A program made the translations under genes and the position numbers. Positions 11,509 to 45,105 of a stretch of DNA of 64,000 nt are shown piece by piece. The notes under the pieces were generated by a model, which did no database searches, had not been told where the DNA came from, and worked only from the letters and a program-made list of their open reading frames with translations. Positions within the stretch are counted from its first letter, which is position 1. Each line of letters begins with the position of its first letter. The stretch lies in IMG/VR virus record IMGVR_UViG_3300043399_000877, positions 1 to 64,000 of that record. One strand, 5' to 3'.

Positions 11509-12520
11509 GCATAGCTTGAGATTACAGCATGCTTCGAGTGCCTTTCTGGAGTACCACCGGCCTTGCGAGCCGTGTTGCCAGTTTATCCACTAAAGCCAGT
11601 TACGGTCATTCAGTATCACTCATGGTCGCCTTGTTGAGGAGTGGCATTTCTCCTGTCGCACGTTGCTATTCGTCCATCAATCCTTCGCCTGCCTTGCGAG
11701 CAGTTCACTTCCGCTAAGAAGTTACGCTATCTTTCCGAACAACTACATCAGCCTTGCGAGCATCCGTAGACCACATTCTCTTTCGAGTGTGGTATTAGAC
11801 CACTTTCACAACGTACCGGGACAGTCTTTCGCTTTTGAGTCAATAGTAGGACTTGAACCTACAGTCGACGGTTCCATAAAACCGTTGCATTACCATTATG
11901 CAATATTGCGAACCTACTTCGATGTGCTGTCCCAGTTGCACCATGTCTTGTTAGACACAGTATACAACACACCGACTGTCTTTCAGCTTGCGGCTTACTC
12001 AACCTTACTTCACGAGTCCGGGGCCTAACCCTTCTTCGCTTGTAATGCTACCTAGCCTTTGCTTGCGGGCTCAGACAGTGTAGCTACCTGTTGATATTCA
12101 GCACTCGTTAGTTTGGCTGAAAGCTGTTCGGGCGCCAACCCTCTTACCACTCACCGACTGGCTCTGTGGCTATCCTTTCGGACAACTCTCCTAACTTAAT
12201 GCCTACCGCCATTCTACTGACGGGACTTGCTTTCGCGTCATTGCGAGTCAAGTCTAATCCAGGCTTGTATGAACGAACCATTGCTGGTGCCAGTTTATAG
12301 GAAACCTGGCCTTGGGTGTGTTACCACACTTATTCTAGTGACGTCATACCGCCAATCTTTAACACAAAGCCCACGTTTCACAACGTTAACTTTGCGAGTC
12401 TCTGTTTTTAACTGTACCCCAAAACGTTGCCAATTGACTGGCTGGTTATACCTTGTTGGGTAGGATACGGATAAACTCCGTTTTTTGCCACATACAGTTA
12501 AAAACAGAGCGTTTACTCTG
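11509..12520 (-). ncRNA. Large structured ncRNA, GOLLD-like candidate
   Basis: ~1 kb with no credible minus-strand ORF, many GNRA-capped hairpins (GCTCGCAAGGC three times, CCGAAAGG, CTCGAAAG), perfect 17-bp stem 12400-12416/12493-12509, embedded tRNA-like domain, own promoter + boxA. Family identity not confirmed by a covariance search. Confidence 0.6.
11839..11910 (-). tRNA. Degenerate tRNA-His-like element embedded in the large ncRNA
   Basis: D-arm GCAT-AATGGTA-ATGC, ACGGT/ACCGT stem with 8-nt loop TTTATGGA, T-arm GTAGG-TTCAAGT-CCTAC; weak acceptor, no CCA. Confidence 0.6.
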
Positions 12521-17331: not shown

Positions 17332-17687
17332 GTCTCTACAAGGTATAGCAATCTACGACATTTCTTTCTCCTTTTGTCATATATGGTGACAGCCTAACAG
17401 TCGATCTTAATGGGTATTAGCACTGGCAGGTTCCCATTTCCTGCATCTCTTCGCTTTCGCTACTTTACCGTTTCTGGTGTGTGAGGCGGGTGTTCTCACC
17501 TCAGTGCCGCAGGGTTTCTGGTTTGCTGTCTCTACTACAAACCCTTTTTCGAATTGGCGACCACTGTTAGCCGCTGTTGCGACCCCCAACACGTTGTCCT
17601 GCCCCATCGGGGGCCTTGGCGTGTTTTTGTATTGGGATTTAGCATCCAAGTATCCAATCGCGACAGTGGGGGCGCATGGATACTGAT

Positions 17688-17762
17688 TGGCGCGTGTGGA
17701 GGGACTCGAACCCACAACTGTACGCTTTAGAGGCGTCTGCTCTACCATTGAGCTACACATGC
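17688..17762 (-). tRNA. Amber suppressor-type tRNA (anticodon CTA)
   Basis: GCATGTGTAGCTCAATGGTAGAGC-AGACGC-CT-CTA-AA-GCGT...GTGGGTTCGAGTCCCTC-CACACGC-G-CCA. Confidence 0.85.
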
Positions 17763-22907: not shown

Positions 22908-23498
22908 TTAACGCCGTTGCACAATCGTATCAACCAGTCCGTAGTCAAGAGCTTCTTGTGCGCTCATAAATGTGTCGCGGTCCATGTCACGCTCAAAGTC
23001 AGCATAGGTCTTACCGCGTGTATTGTGCTGGACATACAGTTCGGTAAGCATCTGCTTCATCTTGGTGATTTCACGATATTGAATCTCAATATCACTCTGC
23101 ATACCACGGGCGCCGCCACTTGGTTGGTGAATCATATGACGAGCATAGGGCAGCATGTAACGATGCCCGGGTTCACCGGCTTGTGCAAGGAAACTGCCCA
23201 TGCTGCAAGCCTGTCCGATAACAATTGTATGCACCGGAGGTTTAACAAACTGCATGGTATCGTAAATTGCCATGCCGGCAGTGATAACACCGCCCGGGCT
23301 ATTGATGTAGAATTTGATCGGACTGTTGGGATCTTGACTTTCCAGAAACAGCATCTGAGCAACAATCAAACTTGCACTGTGATCGTCAACACCGGTGTCC
23401 AGCATGACGATGCGATCTTTGAGCAATCGACTGTAAATGTCGTATGCACGTTCGCCACGGCTTTCACTTTCAATAACTGTAGGGATTAGATTAGGCAT
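22908..23498 (-). CDS. clpP: ATP-dependent Clp protease proteolytic subunit
   Basis: Start MPNLIPTV; [24 protein letters not shown] (Ser), MIHQPSGG (His), MDRD (Asp). Confidence 0.97.
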
Positions 23499-23913
23499 TT
23501 TTTTCCTCTTGATTTGCGACCAGACCGGCCACTGTTTTATAGCGTTCCCAGGCGTTTCTCGCTGCCGGGTTTGATTCATGTAATTCTGCTGTAAGCACTA
23601 GGTCGTACCATTCGTGCTGAGTTCGTAACGGATATGCACCGAACTGTCGCGGCTGATGTAATTTGCCATCGCGCTTGAGACGTATGCTCATTTCACGAAA
23701 TTCAGCTTCCTGTTCTTGATGGTTGATCCATTCAGGGTTGCTCCATAGTCCACCAACTCCGTCACCGGCGTAGCCTCGCCAAATTCCCGTCCATTGCGCG
23801 TCGTCCTCGGGATCAAAGTCGGTGCGGGTCACAATAACCATAACATCGTTGTAATCGACTTTACCGTCAACCAGATCGCGGACGCAACGACTATAGCTGG
23901 TTCCTACTTTCAT
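23491..23913 (-). CDS. Hypothetical phage protein
   Basis: [19 protein letters not shown] conserved phage-type N-terminus. Confidence 0.75.
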
Positions 23914-38637: not shown

Positions 38638-38814
38638 AACTAACCTCTTTACGAATATTTAGTTAATTATGAAATAGTTCACTTACAGTTTCAGAGTGGT
38701 GCGTTTTGTATGTCCACTATTCGAATCCTGTCGGTGCAGAACCGATTATATCTGCACAAGACTACATTCCCAGCCTCTCAGACTATGTCATCGATTTTTG
38801 CCGTCTGTAAGTAA

Positions 38815-39148
38815 GTGCAACGGTTCTGTTGCTAGGTCCGTTGCCAACCCCCGGTCGCTTATTAGGCGGCCATTGCCATTTCTGGCGCTGCGTTAATATT
38901 TGCAGTTATCATTTTCTTCGCGGTAACGGCGCTTAGATCCCGGTGACTCCATCCTGCCTAGTTCGTACATCGATCCTGTTTCGGCCCCATCAAAGATACA
39001 TGCACATACGTCCTACTCCTGCTTCCAGCGTGTCGCTATCAACATAGGTTTTCGGAAAATCGCTGTACCTAGTATGACATGTATCTATGGTGGAGCCGTC
39101 GGGTACCGCCCCCGAGTCTGTCCCGTGTTCGGTGAACTTCAACGTCAC
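38815..39148 (-). ncRNA. ssrA: Circularly permuted two-piece tmRNA (alphaproteobacterial type)
   Basis: Acceptor piece ...GACTCGGGGGCGGTACCCGACGGCTCCACCA (CCA end at 39088) precedes coding piece GGGGCCGAAACAGGATCGA (starts 38988); 7-bp acceptor with G3-U70; tag ORF 38903-38862 ANINAAPEMAMAA*. Confidence 0.92.
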
Positions 39149-39154
39149 ATGTTA

Positions 39155-39183
39155 TTTATACACTTATTCTATACTAGCGTCAA
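39155..39183 (-). promoter_or_regulatory. tmRNA promoter: sigma70 TTGACG-N17-TATAAA overlapping a TATAAATA late promoter
   Basis: CTTGACGCTAGTATAGAATAAGTGTATAAATAAC. Confidence 0.7.
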
Positions 39184-41356: not shown

Positions 41357-41622
41357 TAATCATTTCTCCACATATCGTGTGATTCCATATAGGCCTCGAG
41401 ATTGTCACAAGTGCCTATGTACTCGCCATATAGCCATATTTGCGGTACTGTGCGAGCGTTGGGTGCAACTTCGAGAAGATCTTCTCGAGTCCAAACTCCG
41501 CCATCGGGCCGCTCAGCACCGATGCGACGCTCTTCGTATGCTATTCCTTTGCTTTCAAGAAGCAATTTTGCCCGCACACAATACGGGCAATTGTCTTTAC
41601 TCCAAACAACTGTGTTTGTCAT
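41356..41622 (-). CDS. grx: Glutaredoxin
   Basis: WSKDNCPYC...RTVPQIW, adjacent to nrdB. Confidence 0.95.
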   Translation of the reverse strand: MTNTVVWSKDNCPYCVRAKLLLESKGIAYEERRIGAERPDGGVWTREDLLEVAPNARTVPQIWLYGEYIGTCDNLEAYMESHDMWRND

Positions 41623-42746
41623 AGTTCCAATCCTTTAAATGTATCTGACCCTACATCCTGTTTGATAGCACCGATAGTATAGCTGCTTATCTCAGTTTCT
41701 TGAGGTGCAACCTGTACTTCTGCACCGCTAATCCATTTTTGGGTCCAGGGCAATGGGTTGTTTTTTACAGAATACGGGCTGGTCAATCCAACATTCTGCA
41801 TTCTACGAGAGGCAATCCATTCAATGTACTCATTCAGTAATTGTACATTTAGGCCAATCATGCTGCCGCCTTTAAACAGATACTCAGCCCAAACTTTTTC
41901 CTGATTTACTGCATCTACAAACATTTTAATGCATTCGGCTTCGGTTTCTACGGCGATTCTTGCGTAGTCAGGGTCGTCTTTTTTAAGTATTTTAAGCAGC
42001 ATTTGAGTGCCGGCAAGATGCAGATTTTCATCTCTTGCAATTAGTTTGATGATCTTTGCATTGCCTTCCATCTTTTTGAGTTCGGCAAACGCCCAACTGC
42101 AAGCAAAGCTAACATAGAAGCGAACCCCCTCAAGAATGTTAACACTCATCAGTGCAAGCCATAGCTTTTTCTTGAGATCATAAAGATCAACTACTATTTC
42201 TTTACCGTTAACCGTGTGCTTGCCCGCGCCGAGTAAGTTGTACCAGTGAGCAAGCTCGATTAATTCGTCATAGTTTTTGCTAATGTCTTCGGCGCAATCG
42301 ATAATTTCTTCAATGTCCATAAGTTCATCAAAGATTTTACTTGGGTTGCTGTACACGTTTTTGATAATATGAGTATAGCTTCTGCTGTGAATAGTTTCAC
42401 TAAATGTCCAGGTTTGTATCCAGTTCTCTAGTTCTGGAAGACTGCAAATTGGACTAAAAGCTTCAACCGGTGCTCGTCCTTGCACACTATCCAGTAGAAT
42501 TTGACGTTTTAGATTGCTAGTAAAGATGTGCTGCTCGTGTACCGGAAGGCTACGAAAATCTTTGCTGTCTTTATAAATGTCAACTTCTTCAGGACGCCAG
42601 AAGAATCCCAACTGTTTATCAGTTAGTTGATCCAGCTGTTTGTATTTCATAGTGTCGTAACGCTGGATGGTTGGACCCCCGCTGGGGTCCAAAAATGCTA
42701 AAACTTGAGTATGATCGGCTTTGTTTGATGTATCAAAAACGCTCAT
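41619..42746 (-). CDS. nrdB: Ribonucleotide reductase class Ia beta subunit
   Basis: FFWRPEEVD, QILLDSVQGR, ETIHSRSYTHI, EGVRFYVSF, IARDENLH, VAPQETE. Confidence 0.98.
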   Translation of the reverse strand: MSVFDTSNKADHTQVLAFLDPSGGPTIQRYDTMKYKQLDQLTDKQLGFFWRPEEVDIYKDSKDFRSLPVHEQHIFTSNLKRQILLDSVQGRAPVEAFSPICSLPELENWIQTWTFSETIHSRSYTHIIKNVYSNPSKIFDELMDIEEIIDCAEDISKNYDELIELAHWYNLLGAGKHTVNGKEIVVDLYDLKKKLWLALMSVNILEGVRFYVSFACSWAFAELKKMEGNAKIIKLIARDENLHLAGTQMLLKILKKDDPDYARIAVETEAECIKMFVDAVNQEKVWAEYLFKGGSMIGLNVQLLNEYIEWIASRRMQNVGLTSPYSVKNNPLPWTQKWISGAEVQVAPQETEISSYTIGAIKQDVGSDTFKGLEL

Positions 42747-42798
42747 GTATTTTCCTTTTCTTATAGCTTAAAGGTAGCACAGATTTTACGACTGTCAA

Positions 42799-45105
42799 TT
42801 ATATTGTGCAGCTTTCGCAAACTTCATCTTGACCAGCAGTATCAGTCTCAGATACAGGAGTTTCAAAAACCATTTTGCTTACATCAACTTCGCCGGCGCC
42901 GTCGTTAGTATTGAAATAATACAATTGCTTACCACCGTATTTGTAGAACAGAACCATATGCTGCAACATTACGCTCATCGGAATCTTCTCATCTTCAAAA
43001 AATTGTGGGTTGTAACTGGTATTGACGCTAATGCCTTGATCAATATATTTTTGAAGTACGGCCATAATCTTTAGATATCCTTCGGGACTACGCTGATCCC
43101 ACAAAAGGTCGTACTTGTTTTTAAGGCGCTTGAATTCCGGAACAACTTGTTTAAGCACACCGTGCTTGCTTTGTTTTACACTGATATATGCGCGCGGTGG
43201 TTCAACACCGTTCGTGGCATTTGCAATCTGTGCGCTGGTCTCGCTGGGCATCAATGCCATAAGTGTGCTGTTGCGAATACCGGTTTCTCTTAACTGATTT
43301 CTGAGACCTTCCCAATTCATACGCTCGGTATGCGGTACCAGTTCATCAAGTGTACGCTTGTAAGTCTGATTTGGGGTAACACCTATACCGTATTTGGTTT
43401 CCCAATTGCCCGGGCAGGCTCCCTGTTCGATTGCAAGATCTGCACTGGCTTTGATCAAATAATAACTCCAGGCTTCAGCCCATTCGTCAACCAATGCAAG
43501 TCCCTCGCTGTCTATATTTTGATAGCTAAGACCGTTCTTTGCCATCCAGTATGCAAAGTTAATAATACCAATTCCCAACGGTCTGCGCTTCTCTGTGGAT
43601 TTACGGGCGGCAAGAACCGGGTAATCTTGATACGAAAGAAGAGCATCTAATCCGCGAACAGCCAATGTGCAAACTTTTTCAAACTCCGAGGGGTTGCGTA
43701 TATTACCCCAATTGATTGCGCTGAGTGTGCATAGTGCTATTTCACCATCGGGATCGTTTAGATCATTAAGTGGCTTTGTGGGTAGGTCAATTTCTGCACA
43801 TAAGTTGCTCTGTCGTATTGGCGCTAATTCTGCAATAAAACTACCGTGATCGTTGGCATTATCCACGTTTTGTAGATATATGCGACCGGTTGCTTTTCTT
43901 TCTTCCATAAACGAACTGAAAAGGTCCAGTGCTTTTACCGATTTCTTTCTCAGTTTGGGATTCTTTTCAGCAGCTTCGTAGAGCTTGCGGAATTCATCTT
44001 GATTTGTAAAGAAAGCTTCATAAAGTCCCGGAACATCCTTGGGGCTGAACAATGTTATACTGTCACCAGTAATCAATCGTTCGTACATTAGCTTGTTGAA
44101 CTGTACTCCATAATCCATATGTCGTACACGAGTTTCTTCTGTGCCTTTGTTGTTTTTAAGAACCAGCAAATCTTCTACTTCAAGGTGCCAAGCCGGATAG
44201 TATACTGTGGCAGCACCACCACGAACGCCGCCCTGACTGCAACTTTTAACCGCAGCTTGGAACATTTTATAAAAAGGAATAATGCCGGTATGGTATGCAT
44301 CACCACTCCGAATTGGCGAGCCAATTGCACGGATCTTCCCGCCGCCGATGCCGATGCCGGCCTTTTGACTTACATATTTAACGATAGCACTTGTGGTGGC
44401 ATTAATGCTATCAAGGCTATCATCAGACTCGATAAGGACACAACTGCTAAACTGGCGCTGCGGTGTGCGAACTCCTGCCATAACCGGCGTGGGTAAGCTG
44501 ATATCATGCGTAGAGATCGCATCATAGTAATCCTTTATCCAATGCAGTCTAGTTTCTTTTGGATACCCGTGAAAAAGAGTTGCTGCAATGAGAATATAAC
44601 ACATTTGCGGTGTTTCAAATATCTCACCAGTTACACGATTTTGAACCAAGTATTTTCCACGGAATTGCTCCATAGCTACATAAGTCAAGTTTTCATCACG
44701 CTCGTGTTTAACAAAACTGTTGATTTTTGCCCATTCGTCGTCGTTATAGTAATTAATCAAATCTGGATCGTAAAACCCGCGGGCGATGTTCTTTTCAACC
44801 AATTCTTTTACTGTGCAAGGAAGATAGCCACCATAAACTTCCTTTCTCAAACCGTAATTTATAAGACGTCCACCCACATATTGGTAATTGGGCGTCTCTT
44901 CTGAAATAAGATCTGCTGCTGCCTTGATTAGTGTTTCTTGAATTTCACTGCTTTTAATACCGTTATAAAACTGTATCTGACTTTTGATTTCTACTTCGCT
45001 GGGACTTACACCGGTAATTCCCTCACAGGCAAAAAATACAACCTTGTGGAGTTTTTCAATATTCAATGGCTCCTTAGAGCCATTTCGCTTGGTGACTTGA
45101 ATCAT
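42799..45105 (-). CDS. nrdA: Ribonucleotide reductase class Ia alpha subunit with ATP cone
   Basis: VTKRNG ATP cone, PTPVMAG, FSSCVLI, QSNLCAEI, PSETS, KQLYY, CESC. Confidence 0.98.
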   Translation of the reverse strand: MIQVTKRNGSKEPLNIEKLHKVVFFACEGITGVSPSEVEIKSQIQFYNGIKSSEIQETLIKAAADLISEETPNYQYVGGRLINYGLRKEVYGGYLPCTVKELVEKNIARGFYDPDLINYYNDDEWAKINSFVKHERDENLTYVAMEQFRGKYLVQNRVTGEIFETPQMCYILIAATLFHGYPKETRLHWIKDYYDAISTHDISLPTPVMAGVRTPQRQFSSCVLIESDDSLDSINATTSAIVKYVSQKAGIGIGGGKIRAIGSPIRSGDAYHTGIIPFYKMFQAAVKSCSQGGVRGGAATVYYPAWHLEVEDLLVLKNNKGTEETRVRHMDYGVQFNKLMYERLITGDSITLFSPKDVPGLYEAFFTNQDEFRKLYEAAEKNPKLRKKSVKALDLFSSFMEERKATGRIYLQNVDNANDHGSFIAELAPIRQSNLCAEIDLPTKPLNDLNDPDGEIALCTLSAINWGNIRNPSEFEKVCTLAVRGLDALLSYQDYPVLAARKSTEKRRPLGIGIINFAYWMAKNGLSYQNIDSEGLALVDEWAEAWSYYLIKASADLAIEQGACPGNWETKYGIGVTPNQTYKRTLDELVPHTERMNWEGLRNQLRETGIRNSTLMALMPSETSAQIANATNGVEPPRAYISVKQSKHGVLKQVVPEFKRLKNKYDLLWDQRSPEGYLKIMAVLQKYIDQGISVNTSYNPQFFEDEKIPMSVMLQHMVLFYKYGGKQLYYFNTNDGAGEVDVSKMVFETPVSETDTAGQDEVCESCTI

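What the first reader, a model, noticed from the sequence alone, without database searches (positions are those of the whole stretch)
38815..39148. Phage-encoded circularly permuted two-piece tmRNA with a divergent tag
Seen: the acceptor piece (3' CCA at 39088) lies upstream of the coding piece (5' GGGGCC at 38988), with a G3-U70 alanine determinant and tag ANINAAPEMAMAA*. Established: this permuted layout is characteristic of alphaproteobacteria, whose tags are typically ANDN...AA; the C-terminal AA is the ClpX degron. Inference: the host is alphaproteobacterial. The D-to-I change in the ANDN region and the Met-rich middle may alter adaptor (SspB-type) or ClpA recognition, tuning rescue and degradation for the phage.
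Basis: partly seen in the sequence, partly recalled or inferred. Interest (0 to 1): 0.72.

Follow-up and report, generated by a model that had tools for sequence, protein, structure and literature searches.

The report
Jumbo-phage permuted tmRNA gene
A 382-kb freshwater jumbo phage carries its own complete, circularly permuted (two-piece type) tmRNA gene with the tag ANINAAPEMAMAA, which is a genuine but already documented kind of phage gene whose tag variant is shared with other phage tmRNAs.

Summary
On the minus strand, 39148-38814, lies a permuted alpha-type tmRNA gene (Rfam RF01849 109.6 bits, RF04321 97.8 bits). Its parts are:
- an acceptor piece ending in CCA at 39088;
- a 99-nt intervening hairpin;
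- a coding piece starting GGGGCC at 38988;
- a G3:U70 pair;
- the tag ANINAAPEMAMAA followed by TAA TAA.

The record is a complete 382-kb jumbo myovirus with 42 tRNAs and no integrase, SmpB or SspB.

Thirty related viral tmRNAs show helix covariation, and the tag frame varies like coding sequence, so the gene family is under selection. Expression and processing of this particular copy were not shown.

It is not a new kind of gene. Phage two-piece tmRNAs are published (PMC9004378). Unannotated relatives sit in the cultured phages DSS3P8 (tag ANINNAPMEMAIAA), RcXuper and Phosso.

The tag belongs to a viral family, AN-x-N-x-APEMA(L/M)AA, in which position 3 varies. Non-Asp residues there are more common in viral than in cellular copies, but cells also have ANLN tags.

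An alphaproteobacterial host is plausible but unproven. The phage also encodes ClpP and a ClpA-type unfoldase, which suggests its own route for degrading tagged proteins. That link is inferred only.

The parts
39155..39183 (-). Sigma-70-type promoter candidate: TTGACG (39183-39178), 17-nt spacer, TATAAA (39160-39155). The predicted start is about 39148, the first base of helix H1.
   Evidence: Read. The tool's scan did not list it because the -10 hexamer ends in A. The composite motif TTGAC-N17-19-TATAA occurs 35 times in the genome against about 5 expected from shuffles. The T4-late motif TATAAATA is not enriched.
39088..39148 (-). Acceptor piece (3' half of the tRNA-like domain), made of: helix H1 5' strand GUGAC at 39148-39144; T-arm at 39115-39099; acceptor 3' strand at 39098-39092 (U70 = 39094); discriminator A at 39091; encoded CCA at 39090-39088.
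   Evidence: Rfam alignments and sequence. Across 30 unique relatives the T-arm is 100% paired and the acceptor stem 99% paired, with covariation at 5:68, and G3:U70 is invariant.
38989..39087 (-). Intervening segment of 99 nt, presumably removed from the precursor. It folds into a long closing stem that brings CCA next to G1, and it ends in the conserved leader UUUGAU.
   Evidence: Fold of -29 kcal/mol, z = -2.8. The DSS3P8 and RcXuper segments fold in the same way, with z = -3.0 and -4.5. Viral copies have longer segments than cellular ones (median 72.5 vs 33 nt).
38814..38988 (-). Coding piece of about 175 nt. It holds the acceptor 5' strand GGGGCCG (38988-38982, G3 = 38986), the conserved GAAACAGGAUCGA, the H3 and H1 3' strands (H1 at 38947-38943), the tag frame and the 3' hairpin.
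   Evidence: Rfam. H1 is 97% paired with up to 5 pair types per position, and H3b is 100% paired; slid-partner controls give 0-61%.
38862..38903 (-). Tag reading frame: resume codon GCA at 38903-38901, then 13 codons reading ANINAAPEMAMAA, then stop TAA at 38864-38862. A second TAA follows at 38861-38859.
   Evidence: Sequence. In 15 unique family members, outside codons 3, 5 and 6, pairwise differences by codon position are 74/26/287, with 253 synonymous against 80 non-synonymous codon differences. All three stop codons are used.
38817..38844 (-). 3'-terminal hairpin GCAACGG / CCGUUGC with the conserved loop ACCUAGCAACAGAA.
   Evidence: Rfam alignment end and fold. Relatives keep the loop CCUrGCAACAGAA on stems of different sequence. 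The column-wise count is weaker, 63% paired against 35-49% in controls, because of alignment gaps.
22908..23579 (-). Phage ClpP (223 aa), a possible downstream protease for tagged proteins. The link to the tmRNA is inferred, not shown.
   Evidence: PF00574 at 259 bits; NF001368 at 297 bits, above its cut-off of 249; the head-maturation protease model is below its cut-off. Partner ClpA-type ATPase of 758 aa at genome 314569-316845 (TIGR02639 at 910 bits, full length).

Best explanation
This is a functional phage-encoded tmRNA (ssrA) gene of the alphaproteobacterial permuted type.

Proposed mechanism; every step below is inferred from homology:
1. Host RNA polymerase transcribes one precursor from a sigma-70-type promoter.
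2. The 99-nt intervening hairpin is cut out. RNase P cuts at G1 after the UUUGAU leader, and 3' trimming goes back to the encoded CCA. This leaves an acceptor piece of about 61 nt and a coding piece of about 175 nt, held together by helices H1, H3 and the acceptor stem.
3. Host AlaRS charges the RNA through G3:U70.
4. Host SmpB delivers it to ribosomes stalled on broken mRNAs. The phage has no SmpB of its own.
5. Translation resumes on GCA and appends ANINAAPEMAMAA, a ClpXP/ClpAP-type C-terminal degron.

Together with 42 tRNAs, the gene is part of a translation-support set. This set would keep ribosomes recycling during infection and route truncated proteins to proteolysis, possibly by the phage's own ClpP and ClpA-type unfoldase.

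Shown here: gene anatomy, family membership, helix covariation, coding constraint on the tag family, and the phage context.
Not shown: transcription, processing, charging, tagging and degradation.
For: - Rfam scores are 2x the gathering thresholds, and all tRNA-like-domain invariants are present.
- Across 30 unique viral relatives, H1 is 97% paired, H3b 100%, the T-arm 100% and the acceptor stem 99%, with compensatory changes, and G3:U70 is present in 30/30.
- The tag frame evolves as coding sequence, with third-position bias 287 against 74 and 26.
- The intervening segment forms a closing stem with a conserved leader in three phages.
- The gene lies behind a promoter type that is 7-fold enriched in this genome.
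- It lies inside a complete virus record, away from the contig ends, and the record has no integrase.
- The phage has no SmpB.
- ClpP and a full-length ClpA-type ATPase are encoded.
- The same trio (tmRNA, ClpP, ClpA) is found in the cultured Sinorhizobium jumbo phage Phosso.
- Phage two-piece tmRNAs are documented in the literature (PMC9004378; 79 bacteriophage entries in the tmRNA database, PMC11915505).
Against: - There is no expression or processing evidence for this copy. The metatranscriptome contigs that match come from relatives only.
- ARAGORN does not call this gene.
- Helix H2 of the Rfam model is not supported in this group (23% paired), and H3a has a G-A mismatch here.
- The helix around the stop codon that relatives show is weak in this copy.
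- Clp genes are common across this jumbo-phage supergroup even without a tmRNA (Atu_ph07 has none), so the tmRNA-Clp link may be coincidental.
Confidence: 0.8

Rival explanations
1. The tag has been retuned for the phage. Changes at the variable tag positions (Asp3 to Ile, residue 5) would weaken recognition by a host SspB-type adaptor or shift substrates between host ClpXP and the phage-encoded ClpAP. The phage would then control the fate of tagged proteins.
For: - Non-Asp residues at position 3 (excluding Glu) occur in 12/47 unique viral tags against 15/162 pattern-matched cellular tmRNAs (Fisher p = 0.006). Ala/Val occur in 6/47 against 2/162.
- Positions 3, 5 and 6 are hypervariable while the rest of the tag is conserved.
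- The phage encodes ClpP and a ClpA-type unfoldase but no SspB or ClpX.
- Two other jumbo tmRNA-bearing contigs also carry a ClpA-type gene.
Against: - The viral and cellular samples were drawn with different patterns and are not phylogenetically independent.
- Some 'viral' contigs may be host fragments.
- Most of the nearest relatives keep ANDN (11 of 15).
- Cellular tags with ANLN, ANSN, ANQN and ANKN exist.
- RcXuper and DSS3P8, which are similar phages, differ at position 3 (Glu vs Ile), which looks like relaxed constraint rather than directed change.
- The adaptor's binding determinants in alphaproteobacteria could not be checked in the literature held.
Confidence: 0.2
2. It is a passenger or decaying copy: a tmRNA gene captured from a host or another phage, with little or no function in this phage.
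For: - ARAGORN fails on this copy.
- H2 is absent, H3a has a mismatch, and the stop-codon helix is weak.
- tmRNA presence is sporadic within the jumbo-phage supergroup (present in Phosso, absent in Atu_ph07).
Against: - Every invariant element is intact.
- The Rfam permuted-model score of 97.8 bits is within the range of relatives, 91-121 bits.
- The tag is open and ends correctly with a double stop.
- A strong promoter match precedes the gene.
- The nearest sequences are other viral copies at 77-81% identity, not any sampled cellular gene. The best cellular copy reaches about 70%, and the viral signature motif is absent from 401 genomes. This argues for long residence in phages under selection.
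Confidence: 0.1
3. It is an integration-site remnant (attP) or an SmpB decoy: either a fragment of ssrA carried for site-specific integration into the host tmRNA gene, or a tRNA-like-domain mimic that blocks host trans-translation, as reported for mycobacteriophage DS6A.
For: tmRNA genes are frequent integration targets, and ssrA fragments occur in prophages (PMC9004378; PMC4383910, listed). A tRNA-like-domain-only phage tmRNA that inhibits tmRNA is described in PMC4131195.
Against: - The gene is complete across model positions 1-355.
- No tyrosine integrase is found in the genome.
- The tag frame is present and is constrained as coding sequence.
- The record is a 382-kb lytic-type jumbo myovirus.
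Confidence: 0.03

Closest known systems
Alphaproteobacterial two-piece tmRNA (Rfam RF01849; Caulobacter crescentus ssrA, Keiler, Shapiro & Williams 2000, cited in PMC9004378)
   Same: - Permuted gene order.
- Alpha-type T-loop (GGGGGCGGUACCC) and the GAAAnAGGAUCGA motif.
- G3:U70 and an encoded CCA.
- AUAAnU-GCA resume context.
- AN-x-N...AA tag.
- 3' hairpin with the CAACAGAA loop.
   Different: - Scores 110 bits against 200-316 bits for most cellular copies, mainly because about 55 model positions between the stop codon and the 3' hairpin are missing. One cellular genome is equally compact.
- The intervening segment is 99 nt against a cellular median of 33 nt.
- Ile replaces Asp at tag position 3.
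- It is carried by a virus that has no SmpB.
Unannotated tmRNAs of Roseobacter phage DSS3P8, Ruegeria phage vB_RpoS-V10 and Rhodobacter phage RcXuper (about 147-kb phages of Rhodobacteraceae)
   Same: - An identical 31-nt T-arm/acceptor stretch.
- Rfam scores of 106-109 bits.
- Intervening hairpins of 106-109 nt with the same UUUGAU leader.
- The DSS3P8 tag ANINNAPMEMAIAA starts with the same ANIN.
- DSS3P8 also has a GOLLD RNA.
   Different: - Coding pieces are only about 72% identical.
- Their tags are 14 residues (…PMEMxxAA); RcXuper has Glu at position 3.
- These phages have no ClpP or ClpA.
- They are a different phage type.
Viral-contig tmRNAs with AN-x-N-x-APEMA(L/M)AA tags (IMG/VR loci L120, L078, L114, L106, L103, L037 and others)
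   Same: These are the closest sequences: 77-81% identity over the coding piece, the same 13-codon tag length, the same PEMA(M/L)AA end and the same helices.
   Different: Most have Asp at position 3 and Tyr or Arg at position 5. They are short environmental contigs of unknown host, and some may be host fragments.
Two-piece tmRNAs of marine phages (Melnitz, pelagimyophages; Buchholz et al. 2022, PMC9004378)
   Same: They are phage-borne, complete, alpha-type permuted ssrA genes found in aquatic phages, and they lie behind an early-type promoter. The same proposed roles apply.
   Different: Melnitz couples its ssrA to a glutamine riboswitch, and no riboswitch was detected here at Rfam gathering thresholds. 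The present phage is a freshwater 382-kb jumbo myovirus with ClpP and ClpA.
Sinorhizobium phage Phosso (PV764938.1, 469 kb)
   Same: - It belongs to the same jumbo-myovirus supergroup (terminase 48% and tail sheath 49% identical).
- Its ClpP is among the two closest cultured-phage matches (66%), and it has a ClpA homolog.
- It has an unannotated alpha-type tmRNA scoring 108 bits.
   Different: Its intervening segment is 410 nt, and its tag is ANDNVSTKVALAA, which keeps Asp3.

Membership tests
Permuted (two-piece) tmRNA, alpha type | Circularly permuted gene order: the acceptor 3' half with CCA lies upstream of the 5' half and tag frame, on one strand | tested here: met
   CCA ends at 39088, upstream on the minus strand of GGGGCC at 38988. 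RF04321 matches model positions 1-213 and RF01849 matches 1-355.
Permuted (two-piece) tmRNA, alpha type | Covariance-model score above the curated threshold | tested here: met
   109.6 bits against 50, and 97.8 bits against 47. This is lower than most cellular copies, which score 200-316 bits.
Permuted (two-piece) tmRNA, alpha type | tRNA-Ala-like domain: 7-bp acceptor stem with G3:U70, discriminator A, CCA, and a T-arm | tested here: met
   GGGGCCG pairs with CGGCUCC, followed by ACCA. The T-arm is UCGGG-GGCGGUA-CCCGA. These features are invariant or covarying in 30 relatives.
Permuted (two-piece) tmRNA, alpha type | Helices joining the two pieces, supported by compensatory change | tested here: met
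   H1 is 97% paired with 2-5 pair types per position, and H3b is 100% paired. H3a reaches 64%, and H2 is not supported at 23%.
Permuted (two-piece) tmRNA, alpha type | Short tag frame starting at an Ala resume codon and ending in a hydrophobic ..AA degron plus a stop codon, under coding constraint | tested here: met
   ANINAAPEMAMAA followed by TAA TAA. There is a third-position bias, synonymous changes outnumber non-synonymous ones, and the family uses all three stop codons.
Permuted (two-piece) tmRNA, alpha type | Precursor processed into two base-paired RNAs | not testable with these tools
   The only support is indirect: the intervening closing stem and the conserved UUUGAU leader. RNA-library contigs come from relatives, and contigs carry no end information.
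Permuted (two-piece) tmRNA, alpha type | Works with SmpB; alanylated; tags stalled nascent chains | not testable with these tools
   There is no SmpB in the phage genome, so a host SmpB would be needed. Activity requires experiment.
ssrA fragment serving as phage attachment site | Partial ssrA copy next to a tyrosine integrase | tested here: not met
   The match is full length, and PF00589 finds nothing in the 382-kb record.
tRNA-like-domain-only phage tmRNA (DS6A type, SmpB decoy) | tRNA-like domain without a tag reading frame | tested here: not met
   An intact 13-codon tag frame is present.
Phage ClpAP-type protease pair (context) | Genuine ClpP plus a two-ring Hsp100 unfoldase with a Clp N-domain | tested here: met
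   ClpP: NF001368 at 297 bits, above the cut-off of 249. ClpA model TIGR02639 at 910 bits covering 2-733/734, just under the equivalog cut-off of 993, with Clp_N and two AAA domains. Whether it acts on tagged proteins was not tested.

The most novel reading that the evidence does not exclude
The phage runs a largely self-contained quality-control and proteolysis pathway. Its own tmRNA would append a tag whose variable N-terminal positions (Ile3, Ala5) escape the host's SspB-type adaptor. Its conserved PEMAMAA end would be read by the phage-encoded ClpA-type unfoldase and ClpP. Ribosome rescue and amino-acid recycling during infection would then be under phage control rather than host control. 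The recurrence of tmRNA plus ClpA(P) in distinct jumbo phages (this one, Phosso, and two large IMG/VR contigs) would reflect that functional coupling.
Probability: 0.12. Interest if true: 0.65.

Novelty: new member of a known kind. Interest (0 to 1): 0.33.

Why it matters
The finding itself is a well-supported annotation, not a discovery. Phage-borne two-piece tmRNAs were surveyed in 2022.

It is useful in three modest ways:
1. Standard annotation misses these genes. ARAGORN misses this copy, and the GenBank records of DSS3P8, RcXuper and Phosso leave theirs unannotated.
2. Phage copies form a recognisable group with long intervening hairpins and tags that vary at positions 3, 5 and 6. That gives a concrete, testable question about adaptor and protease recognition.
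3. tmRNA, ClpP and a ClpA-type unfoldase occur together in jumbo phages, including the cultivable Phosso / Sinorhizobium meliloti pair and, for the ANIN tag, DSS3P8 / Ruegeria pomeroyi. These are tractable systems for asking why phages carry their own ribosome-rescue RNA.

Tried and rejected
- **ARAGORN** on the window and locally on the whole genome gives no tmRNA call for this gene. The miss is not explained by intervening length, because relatives with 106-109-nt segments are called.
- **Pattern scans for alpha tmRNAs with ANIN tags.** I ran one scan of viral contigs and one of genome contigs. The 1 viral and 3 genome hits (Aminicenantes MAG, Massilia glaciei, Methanoperedens MAG) contain no tmRNA and are chance matches. 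The same anchor with an Asp codon matched only 6 of 19 cellular tmRNAs, so the negative has roughly 30% sensitivity per species.
- **Sequencing runs.** No RNA run holds this phage. The four metatranscriptomes laid showed only relatives: conserved 31-mers with other intervening sequences, and coding pieces about 90% identical with an ANTN tag. They give no information on processing.
- **Low RF01849 score as a hallmark of viral copies.** Rejected as a strict rule, because cellular genome G049 has a compact 115-bit tmRNA.
- **T4-type late promoter TATAAATA.** It is not enriched in the genome.
- **Helix H2 of the Rfam model.** It is not supported in this group.
- **Pseudoknot.** I looked by eye for a pseudoknot involving the GGGG run before the 3' hairpin and found no consistent pairing.
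- **Host from structural proteins.** One protein gave only 25-40% matches to cyanophage and HMO-2011 proteins, and another gave nothing. Terminase and sheath place the phage equally near Pseudomonas and alphaproteobacterial jumbo phages.
- **SspB-alpha literature.** The papers on SspB-alpha recognition of the Caulobacter tag (Lessner 2007, Chien 2007, Chowdhury 2010) are not held, so statements on adaptor determinants rest on general knowledge.
- **Genome handles** reached through loci carry no taxonomy, so the sampled cellular genomes could not be named.
- **Unpublished genome.** One of the 147 ANDN-matching genomes (G188) is flagged unpublished. The count is 146 without it, and no claim depends on it.

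Full report
**1. The observation**

The window is the first 64 kb of a 381,886-bp IMG/VR virus record that CheckV rates 100% complete. On the minus strand, Rfam finds alpha_tmRNA (RF01849) at 109.6 bits (gathering score 50, 39200-38814). It also finds the general permuted-tmRNA model (RF04321) at 97.8 bits (gathering score 47, 39148-38862). This is the only such match in the whole record.

- The acceptor 3' strand CGGCUCC-A-CCA ends at 39088.
- GGGGCCG starts at 38988 and forms a 7-bp acceptor stem with G3:U70.
- The resume codon GCA is at 38903.
- The frame reads ANINAAPEMAMAA and ends in TAA TAA.

It does call seven close relatives as permuted tmRNAs, with the tags I had parsed independently.

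**2. Anatomy**

- **Promoter.** A sigma-70-type promoter candidate, TTGACG-17-TATAAA (39183-39155), places the predicted start at about 39148, the first base of helix H1. The composite motif TTGAC-N17-19-TATAA occurs 35 times in the genome against about 5 expected. The T4-late motif is not enriched.
- **Acceptor piece** (39148-39088). It contains the H1 and H3 5' strands, the alpha-type T-arm and the acceptor 3' strand.
- **Intervening segment** (99 nt, 39087-38989). It folds into a long closing stem (z = -2.8) and ends in UUUGAU just before G1. DSS3P8 and RcXuper show the same arrangement, with z = -3.0 and -4.5. This is what an RNase P-type precursor would look like.
- **Coding piece** (38988 to about 38814). 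It is compact. Relative to the cellular model, about 55 positions between the stop codon and the conserved 3' hairpin (38844-38817, loop ACCUAGCAACAGAA) are missing.

**3. Comparative support**

A pattern for the alpha-type T-arm and acceptor fetched 120 IMG/VR loci. With cultured-phage and cellular loci added, I extracted 120 permuted tmRNAs. The nearest to the window are all viral contigs, at 77-81% identity over the coding piece. The best cellular copy in my sample reaches about 70%.

Across 30 unique viral relatives:
- H1 is paired in 97% of cells, with up to five pair types per position.
- H3b and the T-arm are paired in 100%.
- The acceptor stem is paired in 99%, with covariation at 5:68.
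- G3:U70 is invariant.
- Slid-partner controls give 0-61%.
- H2 of the Rfam model is not supported (23%).

The tag frame behaves as coding sequence. In 15 unique 13-codon tags, outside codons 3, 5 and 6, pairwise differences fall 74/26/287 on codon positions 1/2/3. Synonymous codon differences outnumber non-synonymous ones, 253 to 80. TAA, TAG and TGA all occur as the stop. The gene family is therefore under selection both as a structured RNA and as a translated tag.

**4. The tag**

The tag is not private to this phage.
- Roseobacter phage DSS3P8 carries ANINNAPMEMAIAA, and RcXuper carries ANENFAPMEMRLAA. Both genes are unannotated in their GenBank records.
- The nearest viral copies read ANDNYAPEMAMAA, ANANRAPEMAMAA, ANANIAPEMALAA, ANDNYAPEMALAA and ANTNAAPAMAIAA.
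- The 'Met-rich middle' is therefore the family norm, and only positions 3 and 5 distinguish this copy.

In 401 genomes sampled from the class that holds typical alpha tmRNAs:
- An ANDN control pattern matched 147 genomes. One of them, G188, is flagged unpublished, and the count is 146 without it.
- Codon 3 starting with A, C or T matched 13 genomes. Their tags were ANQN, ANNN, ANLN, ANSN and ANKN.
- Ala, Gly or Val at position 3 matched at most 2 genomes.

Among 52 unique viral tags of AN-x-N form, position 3 is D 35, E 5, A 5, I 2, S 2, N 1, V 1 and T 1. Excluding Glu, non-Asp is 12/47 in viral tags against 15/162 in cellular tmRNAs (p = 0.006). The two samples were drawn differently and are not independent, so this is suggestive only. 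Hydrophobic ANLN tags in cells show that Ile3 has precedent.

A whole-collection scan for ANIN tags in 185,579 species genomes gave only chance hits. The pattern's sensitivity is about 30% per species.

**5. The phage and its host**

The genome has 41.9% G+C and 42 tRNAs. It encodes a large terminase and a 1105-aa tail sheath, and no integrase.

- The terminase is 56% identical to Pseudomonas phage PA5oct relatives, 48% to Sinorhizobium phage Phosso and 51% to Agrobacterium phage Atu_ph07.
- The tail sheath is about 50% identical to all three.

It is thus a jumbo myovirus of that supergroup, and core genes do not settle the host class.

Evidence favouring an alphaproteobacterial host:
- The tmRNA is of the alpha type.
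- It shares an identical 31-nt tRNA-like stretch with Rhodobacteraceae phages.
- The only cultured-phage ClpP proteins above 60% identity are those of Phosso and Atu_ph07.

Against certainty, the published Melnitz phage carries an alpha-type tmRNA while infecting a non-alphaproteobacterial host. The source sample is freshwater, and near-identical DNA occurs in estuary and wastewater runs.

**6. Clp context**

The phage lacks SmpB, SspB and a ClpX zinc finger. It does encode:
- a genuine ClpP (window 22908-23579; NF001368 at 297 bits, above its cut-off of 249);
- a full-length ClpA-type unfoldase (758 aa; TIGR02639 at 910 bits over positions 2-733/734);
- a second Hsp100-like ATPase.

From general knowledge (Gottesman et al. 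1998, cited in PMC8138137), ClpAP as well as ClpXP degrades ssrA-tagged proteins.

Co-occurrence elsewhere:
- Phosso carries ClpP, ClpA and an unannotated alpha tmRNA (108 bits, 410-nt intervening segment, tag ANDNVSTKVALAA).
- Two other large tmRNA-bearing contigs carry a ClpA-type gene, and one of them also carries ClpP. They are not close relatives of this phage.
- Atu_ph07 has the Clp genes but no tmRNA, and PA5oct-type phages also carry the ClpA homolog. The co-occurrence may therefore simply reflect the supergroup's gene set.

**7. Verdict**

- The most likely function is ordinary trans-translation supplied by the phage, using host SmpB, AlaRS and RNase P, as part of a translation-support module.
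- Retuning of the tag, and coupling to the phage ClpAP, are possible but untested.
- The kind of gene is already described (PMC9004378, PMC11915505), so this is a new member of a known kind.
- No evidence on expression or processing of this copy could be obtained.

Noticed in passing
window 11513-11975 (-); L002 1758-2191 (-): There is a GOLLD RNA (RF02032, 187 bits) with a tRNA-like gene nested inside it (11837-11910, odd 4-base anticodon call) at the edge of the tRNA array. DSS3P8 also has a GOLLD RNA, directly upstream of its tmRNA. GOLLD next to tRNA clusters, with a nested tRNA, is a known pattern (PMC6582537).
   Followed up: partly
window 17418-17509 (-): A skipping-rope RNA (RF02924, 51 bits, gathering score 36.7) lies inside the tRNA array.
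   Followed up: no
window 17688-17762 (-): A tRNA with anticodon CUA (amber suppressor, labelled Pyl by ARAGORN) is present. TAG is the rarest stop among ORFs of 150 aa or more (47, against TAA 207 and TGA 133). This may mean TAG read-through or recoding of some genes. The tmRNA tag ends in TAA TAA and is unaffected.
   Followed up: partly
window 22908-23579 (-); genome 314569-316845 (-) and 376731-378866 (-): The phage encodes a genuine ClpP, a full-length ClpA-type unfoldase and a second Hsp100-like ATPase. The closest ClpP proteins (66-67% identity) are in the jumbo phages Phosso (Sinorhizobium) and Atu_ph07 (Agrobacterium).
   Followed up: yes
KT870145.1 (L002 1201-1587), OP186293.1 (L003 1191-1607), PV764938.1 349553-350242: Complete permuted tmRNA genes in the cultured phages DSS3P8, RcXuper and Phosso lie in DNA with no annotated feature in the records as held. 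Phosso's intervening segment is 410 nt, long enough to hold something else.
   Followed up: partly
whole genome (G000); example at window 39155-39183 (-): The sigma-70-like motif TTGAC-N17-19-TATAA occurs 35 times against about 5 expected, so the phage appears to rely heavily on host-type promoters.
   Followed up: partly
window 41619-45105 (-): Class Ia ribonucleotide reductase small and large subunits (phrog_86 and phrog_84, very strong matches) lie about 2.5 kb upstream of the tmRNA gene on the minus strand.
   Followed up: no
genome 75375-75675 and 354392-363326: Besides the 24 tRNA genes in the window, there are 18 more in two further clusters, giving 42 in total.
   Followed up: no
L192 3020-3347 (-) (cellular genome G049): One sampled cellular genome has, as its only alpha-type match, a compact low-scoring tmRNA (115 bits, tag ANDNVVMDARLAA) that lacks the same post-tag region as the viral copies.
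   Followed up: partly
window 38904-38921 (-): The six codons upstream of the resume codon (GCG AAG AAA ATG ATA ACT) are in frame with the tag and contain no stop. The resume codon is therefore assigned by homology to the AUAAnU-GCA context, not by an upstream in-frame stop.
   Followed up: no
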